A DNA stretch of 64,000 bases, taken from the NCBI GenBank assembly GCA_010909165.1, contig MU008178.1:74369-138368 (forward strand), read 5' to 3'. This DNA comes from Anthoceros angustus. Lineage: Eukaryota > Plantae > Anthocerotophyta. The notes beneath the pieces were generated by a model. The model was not told where the DNA came from, searched no databases, and saw only the letters and a list, made by a program, of their open reading frames with translations. Positions within the stretch are counted from its first letter, which is position 1. Each line of letters opens with the position of its first letter. Below are positions 2,414-62,861 of the stretch, one piece after another. The translations under genes and the position numbers were made by a program.

Positions 2414-5400
2414 CTCCTCCTCGCCGCGGACAAGGAGTGTGTAAGAGAAAACCTCAGTCTCCAGAAGATGGCATCCTTGGCGCATGCTTGCATACAATTC
2501 TTGCTATGCGTTCTCTCCGACTGTGGTGAGCTCACTCATGAGTTGCATCATCCAGCTCGTAAGTGAAAGAGTGGAGAGTCTCGAGCGGGTTAAAGCTGCA
2601 AGGCCGAAGTTGCCGAGGAGGCAGCACGGAGCTGGCGCTATGCCTAACCACGCGCAGGAGGGAAATGCAAGTATCAGTATGGAAAGATTCAAAATTGCCA
2701 CCTCGCAACCTCTACCGGACGACTGATGATGGCGCAATCGATGGTGCCCTTCACGGTGGAGCTCCCCTTGCCTCTGACTGCTGGGCAGTCCCGAGATAAG
2801 TCTCCCTCTTGAGCAGACCAATCCCTTGTGTGTGCTCGAGGTGAAGCTGCTTCGAGAGTCCCTTTGTCAGAAGGTCGGCTGTGTTCTCTGTTGTGCTCAC
2901 ATACTTAAGCTTTGCGTGCCCACCACCACAGATGAAGTGGTCTTTGGATTTTGACGTGCTTCGTCCTGCATGCAGGACGGGGTTCAATGTCATGGCGATG
3001 GCGGCCGGTTGTTGCACCTGCGATTACATCGGTGTTCACGATCTTCGTATATGTGCGAGGCAAGGCGGATCGGAGTATCTCCTTTGCGGCCGAGGATGTG
3101 GCTGCGTACTCACTCTCTGATAGCGAGGCACCGTTTGCATCTTCTTGCATGCCTAGGAAACAGCGCTTGCGTTTATGATCATCTGATATGCATCGACTTG
3201 CAGTGTCTGGGTGCTTTGCCCGATTCGGCATCGAGAAGGTCGATAAGCACTTTTGGGTATTGTGATCACCTCTATATGCTATGCCGAGTGACTTTGTTCC
3301 CTTGAGGTAGCGCAGGATCCTCTACACACAAGTCCAGTGTGCCATGCCTGGATTTGACAGGTACCTCGATGCTACGTTCACAGCTTGGGCGATGTCAGGT
3401 CTTGTCCATATGGACAGGTAGAGTAAGCTCCCTACTGCCTCACTGTAGGGCACGTTTTCCATTTCTCTTGCCTGCTCGGGTGTTGTTGGGCTGTCTAACG
3501 CCGATACTTTTTCTCCCGTGGCCATGGGAGTCGGTACAGGTTTTGCATCTTTCAAGTTGAACCTGGTGAGGAGCTGCTCCACGTAGTGCTCCTGATGTAT
3601 GAAGAAGGAGAGTTCGCCTATGCTCCTTTCAAACTGGACTCCTAGGGCGTACCTAAGGGTGCCCATGTCGGCCACCTCGTATTCTTTGGTGAGCAAGTCC
3701 TTGACATGCTGGATCAGCTATGGGTCAGTACCGAAGATGAAATTATCGTCCACATACAAAGTGACGATGACGTACTTATCTGAGTGGGTCCTCGGCATGT
3801 AAACACTTGAGTGTGTGAAGCGAAACCACTTCTTGAGGTACAAATCAATTGTCTCATTCCAAACCTGTGCTGATTGTTTGAGACCATAAAGTGATTTGAG
3901 CAGCTTGCAAACCTTTCGGTGGTCCTTGACGAATCCGGGTGGCTGCAGCATATATATCTCTTCATGCAAAGTTCCGTATAGGAAAGCTGTTTTAACGTCG
4001 ACCTGATGGATGTCGAGTTTGTGCTGTGCAGCAAAAGCTAATAGGATTCTGATGGATGTTGCCTTCACCACTGGACTGAAGAGCTTACTCTCTTCATAGT
4101 CGAAGCCTGGGATTTGCGTAAACCCGCGGGCTACCAATCTTGCTTTGTATCGTGAGACACTTCCATCGGGATTTAGCTTTCTTTGAAAAGTCCATTTGCA
4201 AGAGATGGGCTTTCTGCCATGCGACAGGTCGGTAAGAACCAGGTTTTATTTGAGATAAGTGAATCGTACTCTGATTGGACTGCTGCCTTCCATTCTGGTG
4301 TGCTGAGGGCTTCCTCGATTGTTGGGGGAACTCCTTGCATCTCGATTGCTGAGTATGCCTGGTGCATGATGAGGTGCAGTTGATCCACGTGTGTCTGCAT
4401 ATCTGTAGGTGTGAGTTCTGCTGAAGAAGGAGTCCTGCTGATCAATGTGTCTCCAGGTGTATAGGGCGGATCCTTCCATTCGTCTCTTGGTGGCCTATGC
4501 CTTGATGATCGTGCAGGGATCATAGGCATCTAGGGAAGAGGTGCTACGGAGCTTGAGAGGCTATGGTTGGTGAGATTTACCTCTGGTTCTTGATGGCTTA
4601 TTCTTTGATTCTTCTTTGGGGTCTTGTTCTTGAGTCGGTTGTTGGGTGTGTCTGGTTTAGGCGGTGCTCGGGAGTTGTTGAAACCTCGTGGTTGAGAAGC
4701 CTCTTGATCTTGGAAGAAGGATGAGGGAGTGTCATCATATGTGCCCCCCTCAAGGTCAAGCGGGGAATAACCAGTCATCCCAGCAGTGGGAAGTGGAGTG
4801 AAGGTAGTAATGCTCTGGAGGTAAGTATGAAGAATATGAGGTTCGTTAAAGTGAACGCTGCGAGATAGAGTTACCTCTCGGGTTGATGGGTCGAAGAGCT
4901 TGTAGGCTTTGACCTGATCTGAGTACCCTATGAAGAGGAGCTTTTTGCCCTTGTCATCCCACTTTTTTCTGGTGTCATCCGAGATGTGGGCAAAGGCTGG
5001 GCTGCCGAAGATTCGAAGGTGGGAGATGCGGGGCTTGTGACCTGTCCAACGCTCAAAAGGTGTGGTGTTTGGTAGTTCCTTGGTGGGCAAACGATTTTTC
5101 GGGGTAAATGGCATGGATGACGCCCGATAACAGGATAGGCACGAGTTTAAGGAGGGATCGGGAGATTTCGGTATGGACCTATTGAGTCTTTTACGCAAAT
5201 GGGTTACATTGGGGTGTGTAGAGTGCGGTATATTGGCGTTGAATGCCGTGGGATCTGAAGTCTTTGGAAGTCTTGGGTGATGTATTCCCCGTTGTATCGA
5301 TCTGGAGGGTGGGCCCCGGAAATCTTGTGTGGCCGACGTTACTGCTAAGGCAGACTCTTGGAAGCCGGTGAGAGCCTCACTTTTGTGTTTAAGGAAGATA

Positions 5401-7423
5401 TGGTGATCTGAGCTCCACTCGTCGAGAAAAGTGATGAAATACTGGTGGCCTCCGAAAGAAGTGGTACTCATGGGCCGCAGATTTCTGAATGGACGACTTC
5501 TAAGAGCTTGCGGGCACGAGTGGGAGTGGTGTTGGTGAAAGGAAGTTGGTTGAGCTTTGTGTACTAACATCTCACAAAAGAAGTCTGGAGAAACCTTGAG
5601 TTTGACGGGATCTCTGTACATGTCAGGGTTTACAAGCAGTTCAAGTATCGGGGTTCCTCTCTGATTGCGGAGGAGTGACTCTTTGTATGAGCTGTGGGAT
5701 GTTCCATCGGCGAGGAGTGAGAAGGATTGTATGTTTAGGAGGTATAGGTCATTGTATGGGAGGCCATGGGCTAGAGGCGTACTCTAGGGATCACTTTGGA
5801 GTGGTAGATAGTGCAGTGGTTACCTTGAAAGGTAATTACCGGTGTGTTCGTGGCGACTTCCTTCGGAGCAAATTCTTCGTCATTGTGGGGACGTGGAGCA
5901 CGTCGTTGATGGTGAGTGATTCGCCGTTGGATAGTTGAAATTTGGGCGTCCCGGTGCCTTCGGTAGAAAAGTCTTTGTCATCTCCTAACAACACATGCTG
6001 ATCGGAGAGCACGTTATGGTAAGTGCTGAACATATCCTTACAGCTGCAAATATGTGTGGTGGCTCCAGGGTGGAGGAACCATCTGGACCTATCCGTCCTT
6101 GTGAGGTGAGGCACCACGGCCGAATAGAGTTTCTTGGAAGTGGTCTTGGTGGTGAGATGGGACTCGTTTACGGGTATGTCTCTTCTTGGCTCTCCGTTTG
6201 TTTCTTCACACTCATATGAAGTGGCACGGTATTTTACACGATTGCGGGCGCCCTTTGTGGTGAACCTTATAAGCGGTGTTGGGGCTAAAGTTGCCTTGTC
6301 TGCACCGGATGGCCTGCGAGTTGAAAGATTGTTTGAAACCTCCTCTTCGAGCTCCACGGCCTCTTGATGTAAAGAGTGCGTGGTTAGGCCGGTTGAGGGC
6401 CTATGGGTTGTTGGTGGCTTCTTCTTGAGTGCTCAGGAACCTGACGTGTATGCGGTATAGATCTGATTGGCGCACTTTGAGCTGACGAAGGGGTTTCTGC
6501 TGAGCTCACAAGCGTTGTGATCACGGGGAGGGACGTTAGTAGCGCTCACATGGTACTCGTTTAGTGTGAATGCCGTTTGGATGAGTTTGCTCTCGGATCA
6601 CGAAATTGTGCACGCGTCTTTGCTCAAGCTGTTTCATTTTCGGTGGAATTGCCGTGTGGCATTTACGATTGACATGGAGCTTTGTGCTGCGAACATGTCT
6701 TTGAACACCTTCCAGATCTCATGGGCGGTCTTCTGGCCTTGAGTGTGCTGGAGCATGTTCTTGTCTAGTGCTGAGAATAGGATGCTGATTGCTCTTTTGT
6801 CTTTCTTTACCCAGGCCGCGATTTGGTCGGCTGAGGCGCCTCCGGCAGTCGTGGGTTTGGTAACTGTACCTTCGACGATCCCCATGAGATCGTGCTCCTC
6901 CAACAGTGCCGTGATTCGCATCTGCCAGGTATCGTAGTTGTTGCCGGTGAACCGGTCTCGGTCCCTGAACTCTACCTTCGTCGTGTTGACGATTGATGTG
7001 CTGACGACTGGATTGGTTGCCATAAATCTTGCTTTTCGTCTCTGAGGATTGTGTTTCTGCAGAGGGTCGAAAACAAGCATGTGCGGCGTGCGGGTTGCTA
7101 GCGACGGCTCGCGAACAAGTCGCGCATGATGGCGGTTATGATCTCCATCTGGGACTCGAGTCGGATGATTTGGACTCGAAGGTGGTCATCGAGGAAGAGT
7201 TCGAAATGGGGTCTGAAGAATTCACCGGATCTAGAGTGCCTTGCGATCATTGCGGTCCGATTCTTTGGTAGTGGTACGGCGCCCGTGATCTTGTGGGGAG
7301 GCTGGTGTGCGTCTTCGAGGCATCTTGCTAGATCAGGATCGGGTGCTCGGGTTGCCCTGTGCTGTGCTTCACGCCATGGAGCCTGGCTGAAAGCGACCCC
7401 AGAACTGAGGTGCCAAGCGGGCG

Positions 7424-7436
7424 GCTACTGATACCA
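7424..7436 (-). promoter_or_regulatory. Primer-binding site (tRNA-iMet type)
   Basis: TGGTATCAGTAGC directly after the 5' LTR; canonical is TGGTATCAGAGC. Confidence 0.85.
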
Positions 7437-7641
7437 TTTAGAAGCTAGCAGCTTGGGAAAAGAATTGAATTATTGCTATCGTGAAAACTCCTTATGTACA
7501 AGTTTGATCAGCGGTTGAACCGTCTCAACTATCGTAACAGTCTACTTACAACCGTAGAAACTACTTATGTTGCCCTAAGTTGAACCGTGCCCTAAACTCA
7601 TTACTTCTCCGTTCCGTCGGCGCATCAAGGTAGTAACAACA
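7437..7641 (-). repeat. 5' LTR of copia element 1
   Basis: Starts TGTTGTTACTA and ends CTTCTAAA on the minus strand, immediately followed by the PBS. Confidence 0.9.
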
Positions 7642-7646
7642 TGATC

Positions 7647-8683
7647 TACACCCTCGACTTCAGGATCTTACTCTAGATCAGGTTGTTCAGGAACAGACTC
7701 TGTATCAAAAATATCTGGATCTAGCAGAGGATCAGGTTGTTGTGGGACATCATCATCATCACCGTCAGGCTCTGGATCAGGGGACTCAGTGCCATCCTCT
7801 GCATCAACAACTGGTAAGACATCGACATAAGATGGATCTGACACAGGAAACTCGGCTTGTCGGCACATAACATTTATCGCATGATCTTCTCAAGATCTCA
7901 TTACGAGGACACCTTCCAAGCCAGGATCTGAAGTTTGTAAGACTATTCTCTCATCAAACACGATAGTACGGGCATACACCACTCTACGTGACTCAGGTTC
8001 GAACAACTTATAACCATGAATGCCTGGAGTGTACCCAATAAAGATATGTCGTTTCGATTTATAGTCGAACTTAGCATGCCAAACATGTGCATATACATAA
8101 TCTTGCAGAAACACGAAGATGTGAGATATAAAACACAGTATCTAGGCTTCAAATGGTATTCCACCAGGAAGAGAAGAAACAACAATCATGTTTTGAAGAT
8201 AAGTTGCAACCTGCACTGCTTCTGCCCAAAATTTGATTGACAACCTCCCTTGGAACATTGTGATCCGTGGTATCCCCTGTATTGTTTGATGTCTCCTCTC
8301 TGTCTAACCATTCATATCAGGGTGATATGGGATGGTCGGTGACAGTAATGCTGCAGCTGGCAGAACTCTGAAATGCTTGTGACAACTCCTTGCCGTTATC
8401 CAGGCAGATGCATTTCAACATATCCACATACGTGTCTCAACATAGGCAAGATACTTCTTGAAATTGTCAAACACTTGGTTCTTATAGCTATGCAGATCGA
8501 TTCTGTGAAGTGAAGCGTTCATCTTCAAATACTACAAAGTAATGTGCACCTCCCCGTGAGGGAAGTGGACATTGGTCCACATATGTCAGTGTGCACGAGA
8601 ACAAGAGTATCGTCGTGGTCTCCCAACTGCCGAAGTGAGATTTGAATTGTTTCCCATGGACACATGCCACACACAGCTTCAAG
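7647..8683 (-). pseudogene. Older Ty1/copia integrase fragment (host of element 1)
   Basis: KLCVACVHGKQ (pre-integrase), SRGGAHYFVVFED (rve) and KSKRHIFIGYTPGIHGYKLFEP...RTIVFDE; frameshifted. It continues leftward past the TSD at 2217. Confidence 0.85.
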
Positions 8684-8990: not shown

Positions 8991-11289
8991 TCCTCCTTTA
9001 CTACATTTACCATATAGAATACTTGGTTTCCTTATTACCTCGTATGAATACATATAAATAAATACATGTGCATATGTCTGAGTCTTAGTAATCTTGGTAT
9101 GTATATAATATCACGATAATTTCTGTGATATACGATATATTTCATTTTGTATAAAATACCCATATCGTCCTGCGATAGCATTACATAATTTGTACACGTC
9201 CAAGATACTTTGTATTCATCATTCACTGCGGATACATACATCCCACATTTCACCCATGACCTATTTTTGTCTGTCCGTGTCGCGCAACCTACCTTCTCTA
9301 GCGGGCGTTCTGCTGCCCGTCCCCATGCCCATCTTCTTGCCATGGCTGCCGCTCCGCATTTCTTATGATTGTCCTTACTAGTTTGTCTTCGCCTGATTTT
9401 GCTATCTTGGCGTGGTTCTTTGCTCATACATGGCCCTCATTTCCTACTCCTCATCGTAAGCATGAGAGGAAACCTCCTACACCCCTTTTTGCGATTTTCT
9501 TCCTCCCCTTCCTCTTGCGTTAAATCCGCTTTGCCCTTTCCATCATCCATCTCCCTTCCGACCCTCTTACACGCACCACGGCACATACGCCGCAGCATGC
9601 CCTTGATACATGTCCGGCATATAGGAGGTGTACTGACGACCTTCATTGCTTACCTTCCCCGCACTGCATCCGGTTTTCTTATGTACCTCTTGCTCAGCAT
9701 CTGCTCCTTCCGTCCTCGTTCTTTCTGGCGCGTGGCCGCCTGTCACCACGGCCCCTCGATGCCTCCACTGCACCTCCCCCCGCTTTCCTCTTTCGGCCTC
9801 CACCCTTTGTCACAGGTGGCGTAGCCTCCAATGGGGCCCCTGTGGAGGTCCATGCTTTCAGCGTCGAGTGCGGTGTGTATGCACGAAGTTAGGCACGCCC
9901 TCAATTTCGTCCGCTGCCTCATCATCTTTTTTCTTGTCATCGCATGTACCCATTGCCCCCTTTTGCCTCTTTCTCCCTCCCCTGGACAATTCCTCATGGC
10001 GCCACGCGCCTTTTGGCCCCACCACGACCACCTTCCGCGGACCCGGTCCTCTCCTCGATCCGCACCGATCCTCCCACTCCCACCCGTTTTGTTGCAGCCA
10101 CGCTGACCCTTGCATGTTCCTTGGTGACACAATTGCCTCCGCTCTGAGAACTGCATCCGCCCTCCAATTCCATCCCCGTTCCTGGTCACTCCATCGACCC
10201 CAACTCCGTCCACAATGTGCATTTCTGCACGTCACTAGGCGATGGGGCACCCTCCCAACACACGCCCTTTACCAGCCTGCTGCCCGCTTGACACACCCCT
10301 CCTTTCGTTAACCGGCCTAGCCACTACAGCTGATACCAAGTCCCTGCCCTTCCTACGGCCATGGAACTTGACGGTGACGGGCACCCCCCAATTCCGAGTC
10401 CGTTACGTGGCCGCTGCCCTCTCCCTATACATCTGCTCACACTGTCTTCATTCACACTATCACCAGGCATGCATGGTCCATCACCATCGGGTGATCGTGG
10501 TGTCGTCGGCACCACGATGTCATTGCTTGATAGCCTCCACTGCTTTCCCCACCACCATCCCACCTTCATGGTTCACCAAGCCTCCCTTCCATTCAGTTAG
10601 GATGTCTCTCGATCTCCCCAAAGCAATCTACTCCCTCTCCTCCTAGTTATCCCTCCACATCCACACCACCACCTCGTCCACCGGCGGTGGCGGCTCCCTG
10701 TCTTCCATCCTTCTCGGAACGCCACGATCTGGATCCATCTCCAATTCCATGTCATTCAACAAAATAGTCATTTCCCTTGTTCTCCCGGCAATACTTTGAA
10801 CCTCGGGGTGTTTTCATGTATTCCATGTCTTACCAGTAGGAACTCACGAGCCCCTTATCGCGAACCGCCCAGGAGGTTGCATGGAGATCGTCCTCTTGAC
10901 CTCCCATATTCAGCCTCCTCTTGATTTGGGTACCTACCATGCTTACTCTCAAACCAACCACCCATCCAGTAGCGCCCTCCCTTTCCCCAAGGGTTTGGCC
11001 CCATCCACCGTTTTTTGGCCAGCCTCTTTGCAAGTTCATACTTCAAGGCTCAAACTTTCCCGTTCTCTTCAGCTCCATCGCGCCCGCAACATCTTCCCAC
11101 TCTTCCTCGTCCACCATGCTCGGCTTCTTCCCGCTCCTCCCCTCCTGGTCCCTTTCCTCTAGTCTTTGCCTGCGGCTTCCACAACAGTTGCGCGTGCGAG
11201 TCATCTGCAGAAGTGTCGGCTTATCTTGGACTTTACCACCAGTCGGGAAGGCGTCGAACCGATTTCACTAACTGCCTTCTCCCTCTCGG

Positions 11290-18479: not shown

Positions 18480-20680
18480 GTCATGGCGAATGGAGAGCAG
18501 TCGAGGAATCTTTCATGTCGACCGTTCTGTAAAGGAAAGCGGGCATGGCGAGCTTTCCGGCTATCGATTTCCATGAATGACCACTATTGCAAGGTGCAAT
18601 GAGGATGGCGGTCGGTTAGTGCGGGCATAGAGTGGCGGATTCCAATGCCGATGCTCTGCGTGATATGAAAAAAAGGCCAAGCGTCCGTCTTCGGTGGCGT
18701 GAGGGTTGTCGTCATTTTTCACAATTTCAGCCATGTCATCCACGCCATGTCTCCCGTTGATGGTCGGTATAGCGGCTGGCGATGCTGCTCGGACATTATC
18801 TCTGCCGAGCTAGCCCGCGATGATGGCGATCACGGGATCTTATTCGATATCTCTGGTGGTTGACGCATCTCTCTTAGGCTGGTCAAGAGGAGGCGAGGTC
18901 GACAAGTGCCATGCCGTGTGCGGAAATGATGATCACGGTCTTCCTTACATCACGGGGACATGGCACGCCAAATGCTACCGTCACCATCACTTATTGGCAA
19001 TGGCGCACCAGGTTGGACATTAGCGGTATCTTCACTTTGATGAAGGCAACCAAGTCAAGTGGGTTTGAGTAGGATACATCATAGGGTTCGACCTACCACT
19101 TGTCCTTTTGTCATGGCATATTGTATGCGGGCCATGTACTTGCAAGGATCATAATAGACGAATGGGCGATGTTTATTGCCATTGTGGTTATAATGTCCGC
19201 CCGCAAAGGGAAAGGCGGGAAAACTGAATGTAGGTGGCCTGCTGGATGATCTCCGCCCCACTCCTTCCCTCCTCCACCCGTCACCACAAGGTTACGACGG
19301 GAGTGAAATAACTACTTGGACCATGGTCATTCCGATTGCATTGCGAACAATGGTCCTTGGCTGCTCGAAAAAGTATTCAACACTGTTCGACCACATATGC
19401 ATTAACCATCCTTGGACCATGGTCATTCCGATTGCATTGCGAACAATGGTCCTTGGTCATCGAAAAGGTACTCAACCTTTGGAACACATATGCATTAATC
19501 CTTGGACCATGGTCATTCGATTGCATTGCGAACAATGGTCCTTGGATCTCGAAAAAGTAACATTTATTCCCTATGCTTAACCATCCTTGGAACATGGTCA
19601 TTCAGGTGCATTGCGAACAATGGTCCTTGGATCTCGAATAAGTAGTCAACACTTTCCACACATGTCATGTATCCTTGGACCATGGTCTTTTCAACTCACA
19701 AACCAACAACATCCATGGCCCATGGGCATCCGCTAAGTTGCCAAATTCGTCCTTGGGTCACGAATTATCGTACAAATCGCGCCTATATATATGAAGTATG
19801 GGGACATGCCAACCGAACAAAAAGGCGAGGTGTGTGCGGGAAAGACGGCATAGCTAGGGGCGAGCCATGACCGACACACAACACCATTCACCCATGGGCA
19901 TCCAAAGCATCATGGTCGTCCTTGGTGAAGGCGTTCAAATCTGCCGGGCTATATATGTGAAGCAGGGGACATGGCGGCTTGGAGCAGTGGGTGCGTGTGC
20001 GCAGCAAGGGCGTGCCTCTTGGGCAGTGTGGCAGCATTATGCCGCCATGAAGGTAAAACCACGATTCGGACGTGTTGTTCGTCTGGCATGGCTTGAGCGA
20101 GCCATGGCGGCATGAATGACCACTGTGCAAGGTGCAATGAGGATGGCGGTCGGTTAGTGCGGGCATGTAGGTGGCGCGGTTTCAATGCGATGCTCTGACG
20201 TGATAGGAAAAGGCGTCGTCTTCCCGATTGGCGTGAGGGTTGTCGTCATTGCAGTTTTTCACAATTTCAGCCTAGTGTCATCCACTTGCCATGTCTCTCC
20301 CGTTGATGTCGGTATATGACACGGCGATGCTCAGCGGACATTATCTGCCAAGGCTAACCGGGTCGTAGCGATCGAGGATCTTATTTGCGATATCTTGGTT
20401 GACGCATCTCTCTTAAATGGTCAAGAGGAGCAAAAGGTCGACAAGTGCGATGCACATGTGCAGGAAATGATGATCACGGTCTTCCTTACATCACGGGGAC
20501 ATGGCACGCCGCTCGTCACCATCACTTGCGGCAATGGCGCAATTATCGACATTAGCGGTATCTTCACTTGGATGAAGGCAACCATGTCAAGTGGGTTTCG
20601 AAGTAGGATACATCATAGTTTGCGACCTACCACTTGTCCTTTTGTCATGGCATATTGTATGCGGGCCAACTTGCTTCTGG
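18480..20680. repeat. Dispersed duplication 18480-19260 vs 20020-20680 inside the KDZ-like region
   Basis: Shared blocks such as GCAAGGTGCAATGAGGATGGCGGTCGGTTAGTGCGGGCAT and CCTACCACTTGTCCTTTTGTCATGGCATATTGTATGCGGGCCA; copies differ largely by small indels. Confidence 0.8.
19317..19690. repeat. Tandem repeat, ~85-95 bp unit, ~4.5 copies
   Basis: Recurring TTGGACCATGGTCATTC(C)GATTGCATTGCGAACAATGGTCCTTGG core. Confidence 0.85.
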
Positions 20681-20790: not shown

Positions 20791-22150
20791 TGTCAGAGGG
20801 ACAAAATCCCTCCTAGGTGTCATGCCGTGTGATACTAATATCTGCACTTGGGTTTAGTGTTTGATTAGAATTAATTAATCTAATTACTTATCTTTAAGTA
20901 AGTATTTAGTGTTAATTAATCTAATGTGCTTATGCTAATTAAGCATTGATTAGTGTTAATTAATCTAATATGCTTATGTTAATTAAGCATTGATTAGTGT
21001 TAATTAAATATGGTTAGCAATAGCTAAGTGGATAAGCTCAAGTAATATGCTTTGGCATATTCCTTGCATATTATAGTGTATTCTTAGATACAATAGCTAA
21101 GTGGATAGCTCAAATGTGCTTTGGCATATTCCTTGCATATTATAGTGTATTCTTAGGATATTTACGGCATATCGATGCCAATGGATATCTTAGGAATATG
21201 CCGATGCCGGTCTAGTATATAGACCCTTCCATTGAGGACAAGCTCGGATCATAGCTTGTCCTCTAGATGTCTGCAAGGCGTTGTGAGGAGGCCAAAGCTA
21301 TGACTCAGGAGGCGATGTGTGAGGAATTTGCGTGTTGTTCTCGTGGGGAGAGTGTGTTTGTGCCACGACGTGCGAGATACTCCCTCCTGTTGTTACAAGC
21401 TATGATCTCGGCTGTGCTGGCGATGCTAGGCGATGCTAGGCGTGCTTGTGGCGATGCGGTGATGCTAAGCGTGCTAGGCGTGCTGGCGTGCTGGCGTGCT
21501 ACGTGCTGCGATGCTGGCGTGCTGCGTGCTGGCGTGCTGGCTGGATGCGTGCTGGTGATGCTAAGCTACTGAGGCGTGCTGGCGTGCTGGCGAGGCTAAG
21601 CGGGCTAGCTCTTTAAGCCAAAACTCAAGTAAGGCCAAGGAGGAGGCGAAGAAGCCCAAGTCCAAGGCCAAGGAGAGGAGGCGAAAGGCAGGGAGGGCGG
21701 CCAAGTCAAGGCGAGGAGAGGAGGCGAAGAGGCCCGGAGAGGCAAGGAGAGGGAGGGAGCCAAGTCGGGCCAGAGGAGGCGAGCCCAAGTCAAGGCCAGG
21801 AGGCAGAGGGCGGGAGGGCAAGGAGGGCTCAAAGAAGCCCCCACCAAGAGGAGGAATGAGGCTCCAAGGGTGCTTTTAAGCCAACCAGCAAGGAAACAAG
21901 AGTATTTTACTCTTGGGCAGACTTGCAGAGAGGGGATGAACAAGTATTTTACTCTTGGGCCATGGCGATCTTGTCCAAAGAGTCTGTAGTTTGGCACCCC
22001 ATCCGACAGCGATCCACCTCAGGGTGCTTAACTTTGGAGTTCTTGTGCCTTGCTCAACTCACCCGCTCACGGTTTTGATATCTATAACTGCAGGTTGTAT
22101 GGATTTTAACATGCATAGATACTTAGTTTCACTAATCACGATCTAAGTTA
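20791..22150. mobile_element. Probable solo-LTR-like insertion with internal minisatellites
   Basis: Begins TGTCAGAGGG; contains AT-rich TTAATTAA repeats, (GCTGGCGT)n and GAGGC/CCAAG repeats. It separates two minus-strand coding remnants. The right end and TSD were not resolved. Confidence 0.4.
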
Positions 22151-25100
22151 GAGGTGTGAACCATGATTGGTTTGACCTGGCATAATTTTTGGTGTGAGGA
22201 CACACTCGTCCAGGACCCAGACACCTGACAAGTCCATTGTCTTGCTCCTCTCGGTTGAGCCTCGAATGTGAGCTCCTCTTTCGATCGGCAAAACCTCGAA
22301 ACCATGTATGCGTTGTGGGATATAACCCGGCATGTGACCTCTATGGCAATAGAATTGCGTCCGAGCAATCTTGCGTGTTGTTGTCCACTTCTGCGCAACC
22401 ATCCGAATCAATCTCCTTCTTTGGAGAATGTTTTGATGAATTTCATCATCAACCCGAGAGGTCTTTGACGGGCACACCACCATTTTGTCTTGAGACATGT
22501 ACACCTTCTTCACCACAATTATCATGTGCAATCACGGATCGTCCATTGTTAAAAGTCCCTGCGTAATATTGGGCGTCATAGCCGCTTTGTCTTGATGCCT
22601 TCCTTCACACACCAAGCAAACTTATGTACTCCATCTCAAATCCACCCCATTACTCATGTTTGTTTTGTCCCAAACGAAGGACACCATTCCACCCTTGCCA
22701 CATAATCCACGCATGCACTCTCTCACAAGGTGAGCTTCTTCCACTCCGTGCATGACAATGAGCCCAATTCTTCCGCGTCGTCTTCTCCGGAAGCTTTGGA
22801 AAAGCTGTGTTCATCATGCACGCATCCAACCGACTATCCATAGGACCAATGTCAAAGCCTCTTGGGACATCCATAACCGAGAAGGGTATAAGCCCGCGGC
22901 AAGGAATCCCGCATCTCCATAATGTTTCTTTTTCCACTTGATAGTAACACTCTTCTCGGACCACAGGCGGTGAACAAGTGCGGTCAGTCTTTCAAATCCT
23001 TGTCCGATTGCAGCTCATCCTCAAGACTCTTCCATTGTTAATCTCAAATATGAAGTTCTTGAAATCCTCCGGCTTTTGCAAATTCTCCACATCCTTTATT
23101 TCTTTGACGCCAGAAAGAAAAACGTTAGGCGGGGACACCACATTCCTATTGTATTCAAACAAGCGGTGACGATGGCGAAGGAGGGTGTGAAAGGCGGCCG
23201 ACCGGCGCCTTCACCACCCTCGACAAATTTGGTTTGCGTGCCGCATGCCACCGGCCGGCGCCCGCCCGGCCTACATAGCGGCGGCGCCCGGCGCGGCGCC
23301 CCATCCATGGCGGGCGGCATGGGCGGCCGGCGGCGCCCCGTGACCCTGCGCATCCCTCTGTGCCATTCTCGGGCAGACGTGGCGAGCGGCCGGCGCCCTC
23401 GCGCAAGAAACCAAAGCGACTCATTATCGTGGTGACGGATCTCACCTTCCAGAAAAGCCGTTTGAAACCGAGCAATCATGTCGTCCGTTGAGTGTAGAGG
23501 ATATTCCTTCCTCACTTCCTCGAAGATGAGCACTCCGGATGTTTAGCCATGGCCACTTGAATAACATGTCGGTTTCTTTCTTGAAGTAATTTCGTCCTCC
23601 ATTCCTTTGAGATCGAGGATGCACATCGATTACCTTCCCTTGCCGTGACAAGAATCTGCGCCCACATTCACCACGTATACCTGGAATGATTTCCGGGGTT
23701 TCATGTCTTTCGGCTTGAAATACACTGTTTCCACGTGTTTGGGATCATCTGTGACTTTCCTTTTTCCCTTCCCTTTCTTGCTGGTGCCAGCAGGTATGTG
23801 CTTCTTCTGCTCTGGTAACTCGCCTGCTTCCCACTTTGAAAAGATCTTATCAATATTATCCCATACCTTGCCCTCCTGCTTCGAGATGCACAGTATGTGT
23901 GTCCTGTTATCCACTTTGTTCTGCTTGTACACGTCATCTTCGCGGCCTTCATCATCTTCAATTAATCCAAGAACCTTATAAAGATTGAACTTCCATGACA
24001 TGGTCATCTGCACTCCATCCCGACGCGCAATAAGAAGCTCATCTCGTAAATATCTTACATTCAATAAAAGACATTTTCTTCCGCTTATCGGACATTGTGT
24101 TATGGTCGGTTGCAAGAACTCTCATCTCGTGCACCGTAAGCCCACGATACATGCGCTTCAACATATTGAAAGCAGGACTTCCGCAATATCGCCAAGTGCT
24201 TCATAGCGACATATGTGTGGTTCCCCAAGTACACCCATAATATATTTCTTGGCCCAATTTACGCATCCAACTTGCTAATATCGTTGCACTCCCGGGGTCA
24301 ATCATGCCGCATGGCGTAACCCTTCTTCAATCCTTCCTTGAAATAACTCGGGCTAGGTAGTTTGACCATGCCTCGTCCACCCTCGATTTGGGCATCCGTG
24401 TAATAAAAGATCGGCTTCAAATTCTCAAGCTTTACCAATCTGTCTCGGAACAACTTTCTTTGGCATAGGCGAGTCCACGATTATTGTCAATGGGTCGATT
24501 CCGGATGGCATCTTCAAGTCTTTCCTCATCGTCCGCACATGGACATCGCTATATTCTCTGGTGGGCTTCACTCACGGTTTCCTTCCTGGATTTCTTCTTT
24601 CTCTTCCCCGGTGGAGCCTCGCTATGTGAGCTGGTATGTGCTGTTGCGTGCCCACCATGCCTTGCTCTCCCACTCGAGTCCCCTGTCTCCATACTCTCGG
24701 ATCGGCGGACACGGAGGTGCCTCAATAGAAGCACCCCGCCCACGCCTCACCACCGTCTCTTCCGCAACAATTGCAAGGGCGTGCAATCAGGCGCCGGCCG
24801 GCGCCCAACCCTTCATGTGCCTTGGGAACCCCGAACGGTTGGGGTCGTGTAACAGTCTCCGGACTCCTATCGCGGGGCGCGGCCGGCGCCTCACCTCCTC
24901 CCGGATCGACCACCTCCATGGAGGAGCCGGGAAAAGGAATGTCCAGACAGCATCCTTCCATCCTCTCGCCTCCGAAAGTCGTCATCGTCGGGTGGCCAAG
25001 GGTCGGGTATACACCCATCCTCCTCATCGGATGGGCCGAGCTCACTAGGCACCGCTCGGCCGTGAGCCATCATGCACATTCTCGGGCTCGACTCGTCGTT

Positions 25101-25500
25101 GTGACATTTCCCTCCTATCTTTGGATGAATTCGGTAATCTTCCGCATATGGTAATCGTGTAGTGCTCTAGCTTCGAGCATCCGCAAAACAGAAAAAGTTG
25201 AGGAAAGGCAAGATAGAAGGCACAAGTCATGGAAACCAACATACAACGATTTGCATCAAGCGCCTTGAAAACCTTATTCCAAAGTTTTTTACTATGGTAC
25301 GCATTTTTCGAAATCCTCCACCAGTTTGAAGGATCGCACTTCTTGCTTTGGAAGCCATGTAGTGACCTCATAAGCCTTGTACATGGTTTCATCTTCGCTT
25401 ATCCGATCAAATACCAAAGGCTTTGTTGTGTGACATCAAACACAGCTCGTCCATCCATATCCACGATCGCCCATAGAACCCGGCCTTGCTCTCGGTTTGG
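22148..25500 (-). pseudogene. Multi-domain gene with a C-terminal beta-class N4-cytosine/N6-adenine DNA methyltransferase (N6_N4_Mtase-like) and a possible ParB-like N-terminal region; frameshifted in this assembly
   Basis: In beta-class order: SVMDVPRG (22857-22880, motif IV-like), LIVMH...FVWDKTN (22658-22765), EYISLLGVK (~22600-22632), QRPLGLMMKFIKTFSKEGD (22413-22469), DGCA(G)SG(T)TT across 1-nt gaps, LLGRNSIAIE (22341-22370). Upstream is WVYLGNHTYVAMKHL (~24195-24240). Confidence 0.7.
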
Positions 25501-26109: not shown

Positions 26110-28420
26110 GCGCCAAAAGTCCTTCGCCGAGAGCTGCTCTGGCGGCCGCCACCGTCGTGGCTCGAAGAACTTGCTCTCGGGGTTACTCTCCACTTGAGCG
26201 TATGACGCCCGTTCGGGTCACGTCATACACATGTCCAACAACCCTAACCATAAATGTCAATTAAGGTAATGCTTACATGGAAAACCATTTATAGGACCCT
26301 AAGTCAAAAGCCGTACATATGAACCCCAATGCCAGAAAACAATGAAGAGGCGGTGTGCAGCGCCAAGTTCTACCGGTGAAGATCTTTCGTTTATTTGCTC
26401 ATAATGGCATTTCCACCTTACCTTGATCGTCGCCTATGTCATGGCATACCACGCCTGTGAAGAGTGAGGACCATATTTCCAGAGGTTAGAGGTGCGGAGT
26501 CCTCGGGCGGCGACAATGTTGCGCACCACACACATCGGTTGTCGAAGAGGTCGAGTTTTTCGTCCACAAAGTTCATTCCTCACGCCGTTTGTGCGATCAA
26601 GGGGAACATGTACTTGAGAACAAGTGTTGGGTTTGCATCGATCTCGTCTCTTCATGTAATGACGACATTGATGTTGTCGCGAGAAAGTGTGAGGAAGAGG
26701 GGTCTTTGATTTCCGGATGGTAGGTGACTCTCTTGTGAGGAGCCGAAGGATGGTCAGATCGATGGGGCCCCGCGCCCTTCCGATCATGAACAGCAGCGAG
26801 TCCGAACTCCGGAAGGTTAGTTTCCTTCAACAAAAACCTTGTTTGCGGTGAAGACAATGTTGTGGCCGAATAGTCCACCCCATCCGTGGCGGATTCCATC
26901 TCATGCACACCGCACGAAGTGGTATTGCAGGTAATGCTCGTCGCCGTCGACAAGCGTCCTCTCCCGGCATTCCGCGTGGGGTGCCCATGACCCCCAGGAA
27001 CTTGAACTTATATGCTGCCATTGATGGGAATCCTGCATCCAGGCGAAGACACCAGGAAGGAAGGGGAGATGGGGTGCAGAATCCCGTCGTGGTTTGTTCC
27101 GCCAAGGAGCGATGTGCGAGGATGACCGCAGGGGAGTTCTTCCACAAGCAAATGATCCGTGGTGAGGATGGGGATGATGACTTTGTTCACCCTCCTCCTG
27201 GTGCATCTGGAACATTCCATCCCAAGCCTTTAAGTGAGACATTGATGACAACAAAGCTTTCAGCGGACAAGCGCGGCGGCGGCAGGCGGCGTCTTTGGGA
27301 GAGCCAAAAGTCCTTCCGAGAGTGCGAGGCGGCCACCGTCCGTCTGGCTGAAGAACTTGTCTCTCGGTTACTCTCCACTTGAGCGAAAGTATGACGCCCG
27401 TTGGTCACGTCATACACATGTCTTGTACCCTAACCATAAATGTCAATTAAGGTAATGCTTACATGGAAAACCATTTATAGGACCCTAAGTCAAAAGCCGT
27501 ACATATGAACCCCAATGCCGAGAAAACAATGAAGAGGCGGTGTGCCCAGCAGATCTACCGGTGAAGATCTTTCGGTTTATTTGCTCATAATGGCATTTCC
27601 ACCTTACCTTGATCGTGCCTATGTCATGTCATACCACGCTCTGAAGAGTGAGGACCATATTTCCGAGGTTAGAGGTGCGGAGTCCTCGGCGGCGACAATG
27701 TTGCGCACCACACACATCGGTTGTCGAAGAGGTCGAGTTTTTCCACAAAGTTCATTCCTCACTTCGCCGTTTGTGCGATCAAGGGGAACATGTACTTGAG
27801 AACAAGTGTTGGGTTTGCATCGTCTCTCTGTTATCCATGTAATGACGACATTGATGTTGTCGCGGCAGAAGTGTGAGGAAGAGGGGTCTTTGATTTCGGA
27901 TGGTAGACTCTCTTGTGAGGAGAAGGATGGTCAGATCTTGAATGGGGCCCCGGCCCTTCCGATCATGAGCAACGAGTCCGAACTCCGTTAGTTTGCCTTC
28001 AACAAGAACTTGTTTGCGGTGAAGACAATGTTGTGGCCGAATAGTCCACCCCATCCGTGGCGGATTCCATCTCATGCACACCGCAGTGGTATTGCGGTAA
28101 TGCTCGTCGCCATCGACAAGCGTCCTCTCCGGCATTCGCGTGGGGTGCCCATGACCCCGTGAACTTGAACTTATATCGCCATTGATGGGAATCCACGCAT
28201 CCGGAAGACACCAGAAGGAAGGGAGATGGGGTGCGAATCCCGTCGTGGTTTGTTCCGAGCGATGTGCGAGGATGACCGCAGGGGTAGTTCTTCCACAAGC
28301 AAATGATCCGTGGTGAGGATGGGGATGATGACTTTGTTCACCCTCCTCCTGGTGCATCTGGAACATTCCATCCCAAGCCTTTAAGTGAGACATTGATGAC
28401 AACAAAGCTTTCATGGACAA
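26110..28420. repeat. Tandem duplication, period ~1190 bp
   Basis: GCCAAAAGTCCTT...TTACTCTCCACTTGAGCG at ~26112 and ~27302; CCCAAGCCTTTAAGTGAGACATTGATGACAACAAAGCTTTCA at ~27220 and ~28372. Copies differ mostly by 1-3 nt indels. Confidence 0.85.
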
Positions 28421-28439
28421 GCGCAGCGGGGTGTCTTTG

Positions 28440-31000
28440 CAAAAATGTGAATGGAGAAGGTGACGGCGGACTTTCTTAAACCGTGTTGCAACCAAATGTG
28501 CATGCAGAGGTTGACCAAGCAAGGCCTTGAGAACACGATATAGGTTCCTCACAATGCGAGGCAAGAGCAAGAGACATTTCTTCAAAGCCTCGTACATCGG
28601 GACCCGAGTCAAACTAACAAAGAAAGAGTTTTACGCATGTTATGGGATCGGTTCTCTGCTGTTGCGTGAAGGCCTTCAAGAGTATATTGTATGGGGCACA
28701 GATCGAGGCGAAAGGGAGGGTCATGAGGAATGCCCGTGGGATAGTGTTCGAACCAACCCAATTCATAAGTCCGTCATGCACTTGGTGCTCTAGCGTGGAT
28801 GGATAATGCTTTTCGCTCATGGTGAAAGACTTCAACGTGCGTGTATAACTACACCTATACAAAGCTGGAGATATGGTCATTGTACAAAGCGGTGTCAAAG
28901 CTACGTGCGGTTGTGACGTCTGTGTGGTTTTGAAGTTATGGAAATCTAACTTCAGTGAAGATTCCCAAATCCAACAGTTCTCGACCGCTCAATATGTCTT
29001 GGTTAAAGACCACCATTCGAATACAACTCGGAAGGTTGATCAAGGTAGATATCACTCTACCACTAGTACAACCCATCTCGGTGGGAGGAGTTTTTCGTGT
29101 TCATCCCATAGTTCGCGAATGAGCGGTGGTATGCGGATGGTTCGAAAACGAGTGAGGGTGGCGCCGCCCGCCACCCTCGGATAACACCGTTCGTTTGAAG
29201 TTGCAGTACCATGTTTGAAACTCGCAGTCCTTGTTCATGGATGGCCCCAGGTTGTAGGTTTGATTGGTCGAGTTTAGGGCCGGGCCGGGCGCCGGCCCCA
29301 TCACCTTCAAACTCGCCAACCATAATATATGACCTAGAAGGTGGACGTTTTAGATTTTAGATTGGGGAAGATGGTAAATGTATGTGTGAAGAGGTGATAG
29401 TCCACGACATCGGTTTGTTGTATGCAATGGGTTTCATGGATTCTGTCTTCGCTTGTGGTGTGGAAGAAGCGTGTTTGTATGTGTGAAATTGGGAACGTGA
29501 AAACTTGGAAGGATGTACACTTGGAGCGTGTTTGGTGCGAAAAATATCGCGTTAGAGGCACACCGCGTGCAGGAGGAGCGGGAAAAATGGCAAAACACCG
29601 TGAAAAGAGTTACAGGAACCGGATAAGTACATGCTCCTCGCTATAGACGGAATGGACCAAGAAGAAGATTCCACACACTGCGTTGGCCAAAGAATCTTGA
29701 TGAGGACGCCGTGTATGCATGCACGTGGTGGGTTGCATGATCCACAATTATACGTCGTGAAAAGAGTGTTTTTGCACTATGCCAATTTGAGGAACGATCT
29801 AATCGACAATCGGGATTATTCAAGATGTTATTCTTAATTATAAAGGAGTGCTACCCAAAGTGCTCTATTTTTGACAACACTTGCCGGAAAACAAGAACCA
29901 GCTGTTGTTTGCGTGTTTGAACATGCTAGTTGATATGGGAACTTTTCAAGGTGAAGGTTGGGTTCCTCCTTGTTGGGCACACTCACGACCAAATCGACCA
30001 AATGTTCTCTTGCTTTTCCAAAAGCTTGAAGCACAAGGAGGCACACACTCTTCCCGTTGGCCGACATCTTGGTTCATGCACGCCTACACCGGAGATCAAA
30101 GTTTTGCAGGAGGTCCGGACTTGGTCATATGTATGGCCGATTAGACAAGGCGATGGTCGCCGAGCATATTCATCGGTGAGAAAATTGAACAACTTATCTT
30201 TCCAGCACCGGTTTAAAATCACCAGAGAAGACAAACCGACTGGTGGTGATGAATTAGGAGCAAGCAATATTCGACATCGATGTATTGGGAAACCGCCGGG
30301 TTGGAGTTTTTGAAATTTGTCCCTCCAACGACATAACGTGCCGGTACGGCCCTCCGGCTCGAGACAAGAAAGGGACGTCGGCGGGTTATCTCCGACTAAG
30401 GAGTGGCACATTTGAGAGCGGTCTGCCGGGCTGCGCCATATGTGGAGGGCAGAATATGGATGGTGGGAAGCATTGGGTGGACCAAGAAGAAATCGCAATA
30501 ATCGTGGAGAACAACATTGGGCTCGCACTAGAAGTGGAAATGGTCTCTCGGCTCGAAGAAACAGCAACCACTCCAAGTTCCCGATGAAGCTATCCTAGAG
30601 GCGTTGCTAAGAGAACTCCCCAACGGATATGTACTTGGGGCCTTACCGGCAGTTGGGAAGGCGGCGAAATGGCACGTTGCATGGAGATGTAAAAGACATA
30701 AAGGAAGGATGTTCATCGCGTACCTTGTACCGATACGCATAATCGGCCTTTCGGATTGGGAAAGTTAATCGGTGAGGTTGGATGTGGAAGAGCCTCATTT
30801 CCGTTCACTGATCGAGCACAGATGCATATGAAGGCGAACGTGGAAGAATATGTGATTCGGACCCATCCGAGACATGGGATTGGAAGGAAAAAGGGTGGGA
30901 AGGCAAATTTCAAGAATGTTCAAGAAGTCTTCATCAATAAAACTCATCTTGTATTATGGGTTCGGTTTGAATTCCGTAAACATCTCTATTCCATTGACAA
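28440..31000 (+). mobile_element. Sola-like DDE transposase (DUF7869-type), frameshifted
   Basis: FLKPCCNQMCM, KKEFYACYGI, LKLWKSNF, MLLAIDGMDQ (29631), FDNTCRENKNQLLF (~29870-29910), GFLLVGHTHDQIDQMFS (~29960-30010). This is the typical DGMDQ / DN..ENKN / VGHTH.DIDQ.FS series. Confidence 0.75.
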
Positions 31001-61563: not shown

Positions 61564-62696
61564 TCACTCCCTGAGCCAGGGTGTGAGCTCGGGATCCCAT
61601 TCCACCAGCTCACCCTCCTTGAACCACAAAGCCACCTCGCGGAGGCCATTCTCCGCACTATCACTGCCATGCACCACGTTCCTGCCGACCTCAATCCCGA
61701 AATCCCCCCGGATCGTCCCGGGCTCAGCCAGCAGCGGGTTAGTCACACCAATGATCTTCCGCGCAGAAGCCACCACCCCGGGCCCCTCCCACGCCATGGC
61801 CACCACCGGACCCGACACGATGTACTTCACCAGTTTGGGGAAGAAGGGCCGCTCCTTCAGCTCCGCGTAGTGCTCCTCCGCCAGATCCTGCGGAGTCTGG
61901 AACAGCTTCAGCCCCCTGAGCTTGAAGCCCTTCCTCTCGAACCTGCTGATGATCTCACCTACCAGCCCCCGCTGAACCCCGTCCGGCTTCACCATCACAT
62001 ACGACAGCTCATCCCCCTGCTTCGCCTCCACCGTTGCCCTCATCCGCCTGCTCACCGCCCCGCTCTTCCCCGCACTGCATCAACACGTCCCCGCTCCACG
62101 AGCTCCGCCATCCCAACTCCCGCCGAGACGTCTCCAGCTCCCCGCTGCTCCTGCTCCAGACCGCATCCGCCATCCCGCCATCGCTGATGCTGCATTGTTG
62201 CTGTAAGAACAGGACGCGGCTGCAGCCGAGGAGGCCGCTCCTTCAGCTCCGCGTAGTGCTCCTCCGCCAGATCCTGCGGAGTCTGGAACAGCTTCAGCCC
62301 CCTGAGCTTGAAGCCCTTCCTCTCGAACCTGCTGATGATCTCACCTACCAGCCCCCGCTGAACCCCGTCCGGCTTCACCATCACATACGACAGCTCATCC
62401 CCCTGCTTCGCCTCCACCGTTGCCCTCATCCGCCTGCTCACCGCCCCGCTCTTCCCCCCGCACTGCATCAACACGTCCCCGCTCCACGAGCTCCCGCTCC
62501 ATCCCAACTCCCGCCGAGACGTCTCCAGCTCCCCGCTGCTCCTGCTCCCGGACCGCATCCGCCATCCCGCCATCGCTGATGCTGCATTGTTGCTGTAAGA
62601 ACAGGACGCGGCTGCAGCCGAGGAGGCCGCCTCCGTGGCCCGCACAGGAGCCACCGTCGCCAGGGTCATGACAGCCGCCATCGCCATGCCTGCCAT
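61564..62696 (-). CDS. NDPK: Nucleoside diphosphate kinase, plastid-type with transit peptide, intronless; interrupted by a ~390 bp internal tandem duplication
   Basis: [26 protein letters not shown]...GTIRGDFG...RNVVHGSDS...W. Ala/Ser-rich N-terminal extension from ATG 62696. Complete catalytic domain at 61564-62055. Confidence 0.92.
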
Positions 62697-62861
62697 TTCC
62701 TTCTCCTCCCGCTTCTAGGATTGAGATCCTAGGAAGCTCTTCGGTTGAGGGGGAGAGCGGGAGGTAGTTGAACGGGAATATACGCAAATTAATTGGAGAA
62801 TGATAATATAGTCAAATCTCTAACAGACCAGCCTCTCTTAGCTGATCGTTGGAGCCCGGGG

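What the first reader, a model, noticed from the sequence alone, without database searches (positions are those of the whole stretch)
22148..25500. Hidden prokaryote-type N4C/N6A DNA methyltransferase gene (possibly ParB-fused) inside a DNA-transposon cluster of a plant
Seen in sequence: no single ORF shows it, but joining minus-strand frames gives the beta-class amino-methyltransferase series in the correct order. These are MDVPRG (motif IV position), hydrophobic strand LIVMH, FVWDKTN, EYISLLGVK, QRPLGLMMKFIKTFSKEGD, D-G-C-A-(G)-S-G-(T)-T-T and LLGRNSIAIE. Established: N6_N4_Mtase enzymes end in KP..L...I...S..GD.VLD.F.GSGTT..A..LGR..IG.E, and ParB-domain fusions are common in phage and bacterial versions. 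Eukaryotic amino-MTases are rare; the bdelloid N4CMT and Marchantia DN4MT1 are 4mC examples. Inference: WVYLGNHTYVAMKHL ~1.3 kb upstream is a ParB/Srx-like GNH motif, and the gene is cargo of a neighbouring DDE transposon. That would be a transposon able to write 4mC or 6mA in a plant genome. The motif IV tyrosine is replaced (DVPR versus DPPY/SPPY), so activity is uncertain.
Basis: partly seen in the sequence, partly recalled or inferred. Interest (0 to 1): 0.9.

Follow-up and report, generated by a model that had tools for sequence, protein, structure and literature searches.

The report
Dead transposon-borne ParB-methyltransferase gene relic

Summary
On the minus strand, 24311-22333 is a decayed copy of a eukaryotic gene family that encodes a ParB/Srx-like domain, a helical middle part and a PF01555 (N6_N4) DNA methyltransferase domain.

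Separate reading-frame pieces hit nothing in Pfam, PDB or phages. Profiles built from relatives in Ginkgo, Adiantum, Riccia and Chara did align:
- ParB-like and middle part: 149.5 bits, against at most 32.9 in controls.
- Methyltransferase part: 67.6 bits, against at most 22.5 in controls.
- Each alignment needs about 10 frameshifts. The methyltransferase part also has a stop, and the ParB reading frame has in-frame stops.

A broken DUF7869 DDE transposase lies head-to-head at 29.6-30.3 kb. The same arrangement occurs in two metagenome contigs and in an annotated Riccia sorocarpa locus.

I found no terminal repeats, no palindrome array and no RNA run holding the stretch. This copy therefore cannot write any mark.

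The kind is known: Sola1-1_Ec32 of Ectocarpus (2025). The scan had already found it on other DNA of this genome.

The minor new points are a D-x-P-R-G motif IV shared with a second copy, and the land-plant hosts.

The parts
22333..22956 (-). Relic of the PF01555-type DNA methyltransferase domain. Motif IV variant MDVPRGF lies at 22854-22874, the KP..L..I..S..GD motif at 22411-22467 and LLGRNSIAIE at 22339-22368. There is 1 stop and about 10 frameshifts.
   Evidence: The frameshift-aware alignment to the family methyltransferase profile scores 67.6 bits over columns 4-218 of 254, against at most 22.5 in controls. The weak hits to a prokaryotic PF01555 profile are collinear.
22148..22332 (-). 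Probable C-terminal tail or 3' region of the relic; not conserved.
   Evidence: It lies beyond the last aligned profile column. The open frame 22135-22407 continues through it.
22957..23452 (-). Linker between the middle part and the methyltransferase domain. It includes a GC-rich stretch (GC 0.59) that is about 250-350 nt longer than the profile gap predicts; a possible insertion or expansion.
   Evidence: This is the gap between the two alignments. There is no read depth from other copies.
23453..24311 (-). Relic of the ParB/Srx-like domain (GNH motif at 24193-24237, LATDHN at 24099-24140) and the helical middle region. The alignment needs about 10 frameshifts, and the ParB reading frame has in-frame stops.
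   Evidence: The alignment scores 149.5 bits, against at most 32.9 in controls. hmmsearch gives E=3e-9 and 3.5e-8. tblastn with P0122 gives E=3e-16 and with P0031 E=7.5e-9. The fold of a relative matches ParB, Noc and Srx.
24312..25500 (-). Possible N-terminal or 5' region (a basic KRKKK stretch near 24552-24620). It is not conserved, so the start of the gene is not defined.
   Evidence: There is no profile alignment upstream of 24311 and no depth from other copies.
29604..30333 (+). Relic of the DUF7869-type DDE transposase, head-to-head with the ParB-methyltransferase relic. LAIDGMDQ lies at 29637-29660 and VGHTHDQIDQMFS at 29972-30010. It is split over three frames.
   Evidence: Pfam PF25273 gives E=3.1e-16. 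The relic is collinear with the transposase of L012 and L013 and with the annotated 813-aa DUF7869 gene of Riccia (E=5e-16).

Best explanation
Window 22.1-24.3 kb (minus strand) is a pseudogene copy of the accessory gene of a DUF7869-transposase (Sola1-like) cut-and-paste DNA transposon. The ancestral gene encoded one protein with three parts: a ParB/Srx-fold DNA-binding domain, a helical middle region, and a C-terminal beta-class PF01555 amino-methyltransferase domain. The transposase gene lies head-to-head at 29.6-30.3 kb and is also broken.

How intact elements work is inferred, not shown. The transposase would move the element. The ParB-like domain would probably bind palindromes specific to the element; the Riccia relative carries 18 copies of a 16-bp palindrome. 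This binding would bring the methyltransferase to the element's own DNA, where it would add 6mA or 4mC.

The copy in this window has lost reading frames, ends and any palindrome array. It is an inert fossil among many copies in this genome.
For: - Family homology is significant, both frameshift-aware and by single pieces.
- Relatives found through the ParB-like part carry PF01555 above Pfam's cut-off: P0019 at E=7.6e-18, also P0072, P0094, P0055 and P0026. Their sources name Ginkgo, Adiantum, Riccia and Chara.
- A predicted structure of a relative's ParB-like region (pLDDT 84) has ParB, Noc, KorB or sulfiredoxin in nearly all of the first 40 PDB matches; the few exceptions are chains of Atu1540.
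- A DUF7869 relic lies head-to-head in the window. The same arrangement and a spacing of about 5 kb occur in L012 and L013. In Riccia chromosome CM100795.1 both genes are annotated.
- The palindrome array is seen in Riccia.
- Decay: about 20 frameshifts and stops.
- Short high-depth contigs from other copies cover only the conserved parts, and they carry indels relative to the window at 22405, 22408 and elsewhere.
- The published precedent is PMC12477816.
Against: - No piece reaches significance in Pfam, PDB or phage searches on its own.
- No terminal inverted repeats or target-site duplication could be found, so the element's limits and its Sola1 assignment are untested here.
- The 25.5-29.4 kb stretch between the two genes has no similarity to the other loci, and it holds a 1.17-kb tandem duplication.
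- Foldseek E-values for the ParB fold are only 0.01-0.1.
- The roles proposed for the ParB-like domain and the methyltransferase have never been tested experimentally.
Confidence: 0.88

Rival explanations
1. The gene is intact or spliced, and the frame changes are introns or assembly errors. On this reading it is a working, possibly domesticated, methyltransferase gene.
For: Most of the word depth from other copies shows 1-nt insertions at 22405 and 22408 relative to the window. Some frameshifts could therefore be errors of this assembly. Relatives in AT-rich contigs seem to have introns.
Against: Frame changes occur without any extra sequence between the aligned parts, so they are not introns. 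Stops lie inside the conserved ParB frame. Each domain needs about 10 frameshifts. Part of the read depth agrees with the window at the indel sites. No RNA run was found to hold the stretch. The partner transposase is broken too.
Confidence: 0.05
2. The methyltransferase relic and the DUF7869 relic are unrelated fragments that merely lie near each other in a transposon graveyard.
For: No shared ends were found. The 4 kb between them is not similar to other loci and contains a tandem duplication.
Against: The same head-to-head order, with a similar distance of about 5 kb between the GGNH and GHTH motifs, is seen in L012, L013 and the Riccia locus. The same is reported for Ectocarpus Sola1-1.
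Confidence: 0.06
3. The motifs are a chance resemblance in transposon debris, or the stretch is a bacterial, phage or giant-virus insertion or contamination.
For: Single pieces give no database hit.
Against: Alignment scores are about three and four and a half times the best control. The nearest relatives are eukaryotic, from Ginkgo, fern, liverwort and stonewort. The flanks are plant retrotransposons and plant-type genes.
Confidence: 0.01

Closest known systems
Sola1-1_Ec32 of Ectocarpus (Genome Biol 2025, PMC12477816), with similar proteins cited there for green and red algal transposons
   Same: It is a cut-and-paste DNA transposon whose accessory gene lies on the strand opposite the transposase. 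[quoted passage not shown]
   Different: The host here is a land plant, and this copy is dead. Motif IV reads D-V-P-R-G. The Sola1 identity of the DUF7869 transposase was not tested here. The element size is unknown, whereas the Ectocarpus element is 21.5 kb.
Streptophyte ParB-like/PF01555 proteins: Ginkgo Gb_37443, Adiantum MCO5585897.1, Riccia KAL3696720.1, Chara GBG66685.1
   Same: They have the same domain order and the same GGNH and LA.DHN motifs, and they align collinearly with the window. The Riccia gene is head-to-head with a DUF7869 gene.
   Different: These are annotated open genes, with D-A-P-Y-G in Adiantum and D-I-P-H-G in Ginkgo at motif IV. The window copy is broken and has Arg at that position.
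Phage and bacterial ParB-fused beta-class methyltransferases (PF02195 + PF01555; ParB-terminase loci)
   Same: They combine a ParB/Srx-fold domain with a PF01555 methyltransferase and show the beta-class motif order.
   Different: No direct sequence hit from the window. The eukaryotic family has a long helical middle part and basic tracts that look like nuclear-import signals (my inference), and it is paired with a DDE transposase.
Marchantia MpDN4MT1a/b and the bdelloid N4CMT (eukaryotic 4mC writers)
   Same: They are eukaryotic amino-methyltransferases of prokaryotic type.
   Different: MpDN4MT1 has the canonical TSPPY motif and is a host gene expressed in sperm (bioRxiv 10.1101/2021.02.12.428880). 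That paper mentions no ParB domain and no transposase partner. This family has D-x-P-Y/H/R-G.

Membership tests
PF01555 N6_N4_Mtase (beta-class amino-methyltransferase) | Significant match to the family profile | tested here: inconclusive
   The window pieces alone give no Pfam hit. Relatives pass Pfam's cut-off. The window aligns to their methyltransferase domain at 67.6 bits, against at most 22.5 in controls. A home-made prokaryotic PF01555 profile gives only E=0.05 for the best piece.
PF01555 N6_N4_Mtase (beta-class amino-methyltransferase) | Motif order IV ... X-I (catalytic motif before the AdoMet-binding motif) | tested here: met
   Motif IV lies at 22854-22874. It comes before the KP..GD motif at 22411-22467 and the LGR..I.E motif at 22339-22368 on the minus strand.
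PF01555 N6_N4_Mtase (beta-class amino-methyltransferase) | Catalytic motif IV (D/S)-P-P-(Y/F) | tested here: not met
   The window has D-V-P-R-G and the Logan copy L014 has D-L-P-R-G, both with an AGA codon for Arg. Other family members have D-A-P-Y-G or D-I-P-H-G.
PF01555 N6_N4_Mtase (beta-class amino-methyltransferase) | Motif I F-x-G-x-G and an open reading frame | tested here: not met
   The motif I stretch needs several frameshifts and has no clear reading. The domain has 1 stop and about 10 frameshifts.
ParB/Srx N-terminal domain | ParB/Srx fold with the conserved glycine-rich motif | tested here: met
   The family motif GGNH is present (the window has LGNH). An AlphaFold model of the relative L012 ORF has pLDDT 84. 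ParB, Noc, KorB or sulfiredoxin make up nearly all of its first 40 PDB matches, with probability up to 1.0 but E-values only 0.01-0.1. Pfam ParBc was not hit at E<=0.001 in relatives.
Sola1 superfamily of DNA transposons | Sola1-type DDE transposase | not testable with these tools
   The transposase relic matches Pfam DUF7869 (E=3e-16). No Sola1 reference profile is available here, and no paper in the library links DUF7869 to Sola1. The assignment rests on analogy with Ectocarpus and on earlier notes of this scan.
Sola1 superfamily of DNA transposons | Terminal inverted repeats and target-site duplication | tested here: not met
   No credible inverted repeats flank 17-42 kb.
MpDN4MT1 / N4CMT eukaryotic 4mC writers | TSPPY catalytic motif; host gene | tested here: not met
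   The motif here is D-V-P-R-G. The MpDN4MT1 motif is given.

The most novel reading that the evidence does not exclude
Land plants (this genome, and also Ginkgo, ferns and liverworts) may host a living lineage of DUF7869/Sola1-like transposons that mark themselves. In this reading the ParB-like domain recognises element-specific, parS-like palindromes. The attached methyltransferase, in one sublineage with Arg in place of the catalytic aromatic residue (D-x-P-R-G, the same AGA codon in two divergent copies), then writes 6mA or 4mC or has become a pure DNA binder. Intact copies elsewhere in this genome would then be a transposon-encoded source of non-5mC DNA methylation in a land plant.
Probability: 0.12. 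Interest if true: 0.7.

Novelty: new member of a known kind. Interest (0 to 1): 0.27.

Why it matters
This copy matters little by itself. It is a fossil and adds one more record to a family that this scan has already noted at least ten times in this genome.

The family is of moderate interest:
- A transposon that carries its own ParB-like/amino-methyltransferase protein has been published only for algae.
- The relatives found here place it in a gymnosperm, a fern, a liverwort and a stonewort.
- The Riccia locus shows a dense array of one 16-bp palindrome across the element, which gives a testable idea of how the ParB-like domain finds its target.
- The shared Arg at motif IV raises the question whether this sublineage still methylates DNA.

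Tried and rejected
- Pfam on 20 separate pieces of the region gave nothing relevant.
- PDB sequence search with three methyltransferase pieces gave only chance hits to zinc fingers and complement factor.
- Phage tblastn with two pieces gave no methyltransferase hit.
- ESM Atlas look-up of the 113-aa piece gave no usable lead.
- Word-indexed protein searches with the 163-aa and 113-aa pieces were blank, probably because of the length window.
- TIR searches were negative.
- Searches in the window for the Riccia palindrome, and for any recurrent palindrome, were negative.
- Literature search for DUF7869 found no paper. Papers on Sola1-3 gave no usable diagnostic.
- DNA for the Adiantum loci could not be fetched, and Ginkgo P0019 is not on record by position.
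- A bacterial or phage origin of the stretch, and a relationship to DN4MT1, were considered and rejected.
Full report
**What is in the sequence.** The region has no long open frame on either strand.
- MDVPRGF at 22854-22874
- LIVMHG at 22745-22762
- FVWDKTN at 22658-22678
- QRPLGLMMKFIKTFSKEGD at 22411-22467
- LLGRNSIAIE at 22339-22368
- WVYLGNHTYVAMKHL at 24193-24237

The ParB-like stretch is mostly in one frame, but that frame holds in-frame stops.

**Is it more than chance? General databases.** The stop-free pieces, searched apart, gave nothing:
- Pfam: no relevant hit.
- PDB sequence search: only chance hits.
- Phage tblastn: no methyltransferase.
- Word-indexed protein search: blank.
- ESM Atlas: no lead.

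I then built a local profile from E. coli YhdJ and 11 phage PF01555 enzymes and scored all 2415 six-frame pieces of the window.
- The best piece in the whole window was 22411-22509(-), the KP..L..I..S..GD motif, at E=0.05.
- Pieces 22625-22810(-) and 22135-22407(-) ranked 3rd and 7th.
- The three are collinear with the profile.
- Their chain score is 13.2. The next best chain in the window scores 3.6, and 26 reversed or shuffled windows reach at most 7.6.

This is suggestive but not decisive.

**Finding the gene's own family.** A Pfam DUF7869 (PF25273) match at 29930-30310(+), E=3.1e-16, marks a DDE transposase relic. Short relatives of that piece led to two contigs from one JGI metagenome, L012 and L013. 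Upstream of the transposase, on the opposite strand, both carry a gene similar to window 24042-24200 and 23633-24121.

I searched a 227-aa open frame of that gene (L012:931-1614, minus strand) against 1.84 billion representatives. It found 155 relatives.
- The long ones end in a PF01555 domain above Pfam's cut-off. P0019 has E=7.6e-18; P0072, P0094, P0055 and P0026 also pass.
- Their sources name them as Ginkgo biloba Gb_37443, Adiantum nelumboides, Riccia sorocarpa and Chara braunii proteins.

**Testing the window against that family.**
- tblastn of these proteins on the window gives hits only at 24305-23453 on the minus strand, apart from one weak hit of P0026 (E=0.002) at 62348-62575 on the plus strand. 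P0122 has E=3e-16 and P0031 E=7.5e-9.
- A full-length family profile hits 23633-24121(-) at E=3e-9 and 24042-24200(-) at E=3.5e-8. Weaker collinear hits continue into the methyltransferase part.
- I wrote a frameshift-aware local aligner (profile against DNA).
  - The ParB-like plus middle part aligns from 24311 to 23453 at 149.5 bits. Twenty-eight other segments of the window give a mean of 20.6 and a maximum of 32.9.
  - The family's methyltransferase-domain profile aligns from 22956 to 22333, columns 4-218 of 254, at 67.6 bits. In 108 genomic segments and 100 shuffles the means are 15.1 and 15.5 and the maximum is 22.5.
- Each alignment needs about 10 frameshifts, and the methyltransferase part passes through one stop.

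The motif I stretch is too damaged for any one reading.

**The ParB-like domain.**
- The family's nearly invariant residues are G-G-x-H, a Leu, and the Asn of a LA..HN motif. The window keeps LGNH and LATDHN.
- Pfam's ParBc model was not hit in relatives at E<=0.001.
- An AlphaFold model of the L012 open frame, built on 51 family sequences (mean pLDDT 83.9), has ParB, Noc, KorB or sulfiredoxin in nearly all of its first 40 PDB matches. The few exceptions are chains of Atu1540.
- Foldseek probabilities reach 1.0, but E-values are only 0.01-0.1.

"ParB/Srx-like" is therefore supported by fold, less so by sequence.

**Motif IV.**
- Adiantum has D-A-P-Y-G-F and Ginkgo has D-I-P-H-G-Y. A further D-A-P-Y-G-F member (P0132) has no named source.
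- The window has D-V-P-R-G-F.
- An independent Logan contig (L014, run SRR33208241) has D-L-P-R-G-L. It shows no DNA-level similarity to the window.
- Both use the AGA codon for Arg.

The Arg therefore looks like an inherited trait of a sublineage rather than random decay of this copy. MpDN4MT1 of Marchantia has TSPPY instead.

**The transposon link.** The window's transposase relic is split over three frames. It is collinear with L012 and L013 through four blocks: the D-G-M-D-Q block (29637-29660), an ENKNQ block, the GHTH..IDQ.FS block (29972-30010) and a block after it.

In Riccia sorocarpa chromosome CM100795.1, the annotated ParB-like/PF01555 gene (L015:10001-13195, plus strand) lies head-to-head with an annotated 813-aa DUF7869 gene (4215-8109, minus strand). 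Window pieces match both genes. The orientation and the roughly 5-kb spacing between the GGNH and GHTH motifs agree in all four loci.

This matches the published Sola1-1_Ec32 element of Ectocarpus. That element's 1104-aa ParB-like plus N4C/N6A methyltransferase gene lies opposite the transposase, and the paper notes that similar proteins are known from green and red algal transposons (PMC12477816). I could not test whether DUF7869 transposases are Sola1 in the strict sense.

**State of this copy.**
- No terminal inverted repeats were found around 17-42 kb.
- The Riccia element carries 18 copies (at most 2 mismatches; 0 expected) of the palindrome TGTATGCGCGCATACA. They lie between 3246 and 13545 of L015, flanking and separating the two genes.
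- The window has neither this palindrome nor any other recurrent one.
- One public run holds parts of the stretch. Its short contigs pile up only on 22260-22700 and 23700-24500, with summed word depth in the hundreds. That is, they cover only the conserved coding parts, as expected from many diverged copies.
- Many of those contigs differ from the window by single-base indels, for example at 22405 and 22408 inside the motif I stretch.
- No RNA run was found to hold the stretch, though the run search was not made for RNA alone.

**Mechanism.** Shown: the homology, the domain order, the pairing with the transposase, the palindrome array in a relative, and the decay of this copy.

Inferred, for intact elements:
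- The DDE transposase moves the element.
- The ParB-like domain binds the element's own palindromes, much as bacterial ParB binds parS.
- This binding places the methyltransferase on the element, where it adds 6mA or 4mC. The mark might shield the element from host silencing, or couple transposition to replication as Dam methylation does for IS10. This last comparison rests on my own knowledge.
- The Arg variant may have lost catalysis.

None of this applies to the copy in the window, which is inert.

**Comparison and verdict.** The scan has already noted this family on other DNA of the same genome, and four follow-ups reached the same reading. Those notes gave me the lead to the Ectocarpus paper and to DUF7869. 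I re-derived each point here.

This finding is a correct observation of an ordinary, dead member of a known kind. The points with some residual interest belong to the family as a whole: its land-plant hosts, its Arg-bearing sublineage and its palindrome arrays.

Noticed in passing
window 19313-19690: Five copies, about 90 bp apart, of a unit that contains the motif TTGGACCATGGTCA (core palindrome GACCATGGTC) and an imperfect hairpin. There are 7 matches in the window against 0.7 expected. The array lies about 2.5 kb beyond the 3' end of the methyltransferase relic. Whether it belongs to that element, for instance as a subterminal repeat, is unknown.
   Followed up: partly
window 26241-28612: A tandem duplication of a unit of about 1170-1186 bp (copies 92-100% alike) lies between the ParB-methyltransferase relic and the transposase relic. 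It holds a 277-aa open frame (27779-28612, minus strand) with no Pfam hit.
   Followed up: no
L015:3246-13545 (Riccia sorocarpa CM100795.1): Eighteen copies of the 16-bp palindrome TGTATGCGCGCATACA are spread over the element that holds the DUF7869 and ParB-methyltransferase genes, with a cluster in the shared promoter region (9595-9733). It is a candidate binding site for the ParB-like domain.
   Followed up: partly
L015:18064-22101: A second DUF7869 gene (759 aa) is surrounded by a different palindrome (TCCATGAG.CTCATGGA, about 10 copies). This suggests that each element family has its own palindrome. No ParB-methyltransferase gene was seen in the flank that was fetched.
   Followed up: no
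window 22960-23460: A GC-rich stretch (GC 0.59, CpG observed/expected 1.14) lies inside the relic. It is longer than the family profile allows and has no depth from other copies; a possible insertion or local expansion.
   Followed up: no
window 57936-60359 and 62052-63754: Host-type genes lie at the far end of the window. An 807-aa open frame has 174-bp and 33-bp internal repeats and an ULTRAPETALA1-type SAND domain. There are also pieces of a nucleoside diphosphate kinase and a DEAD_2 helicase.
   Followed up: no
L012 and L013 (JGI metagenome 3300072920): Two AT-rich eukaryotic contigs from one metagenome carry decayed copies of the same two-gene element, next to copia- and gypsy-type retrotransposon genes.
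   Followed up: partly
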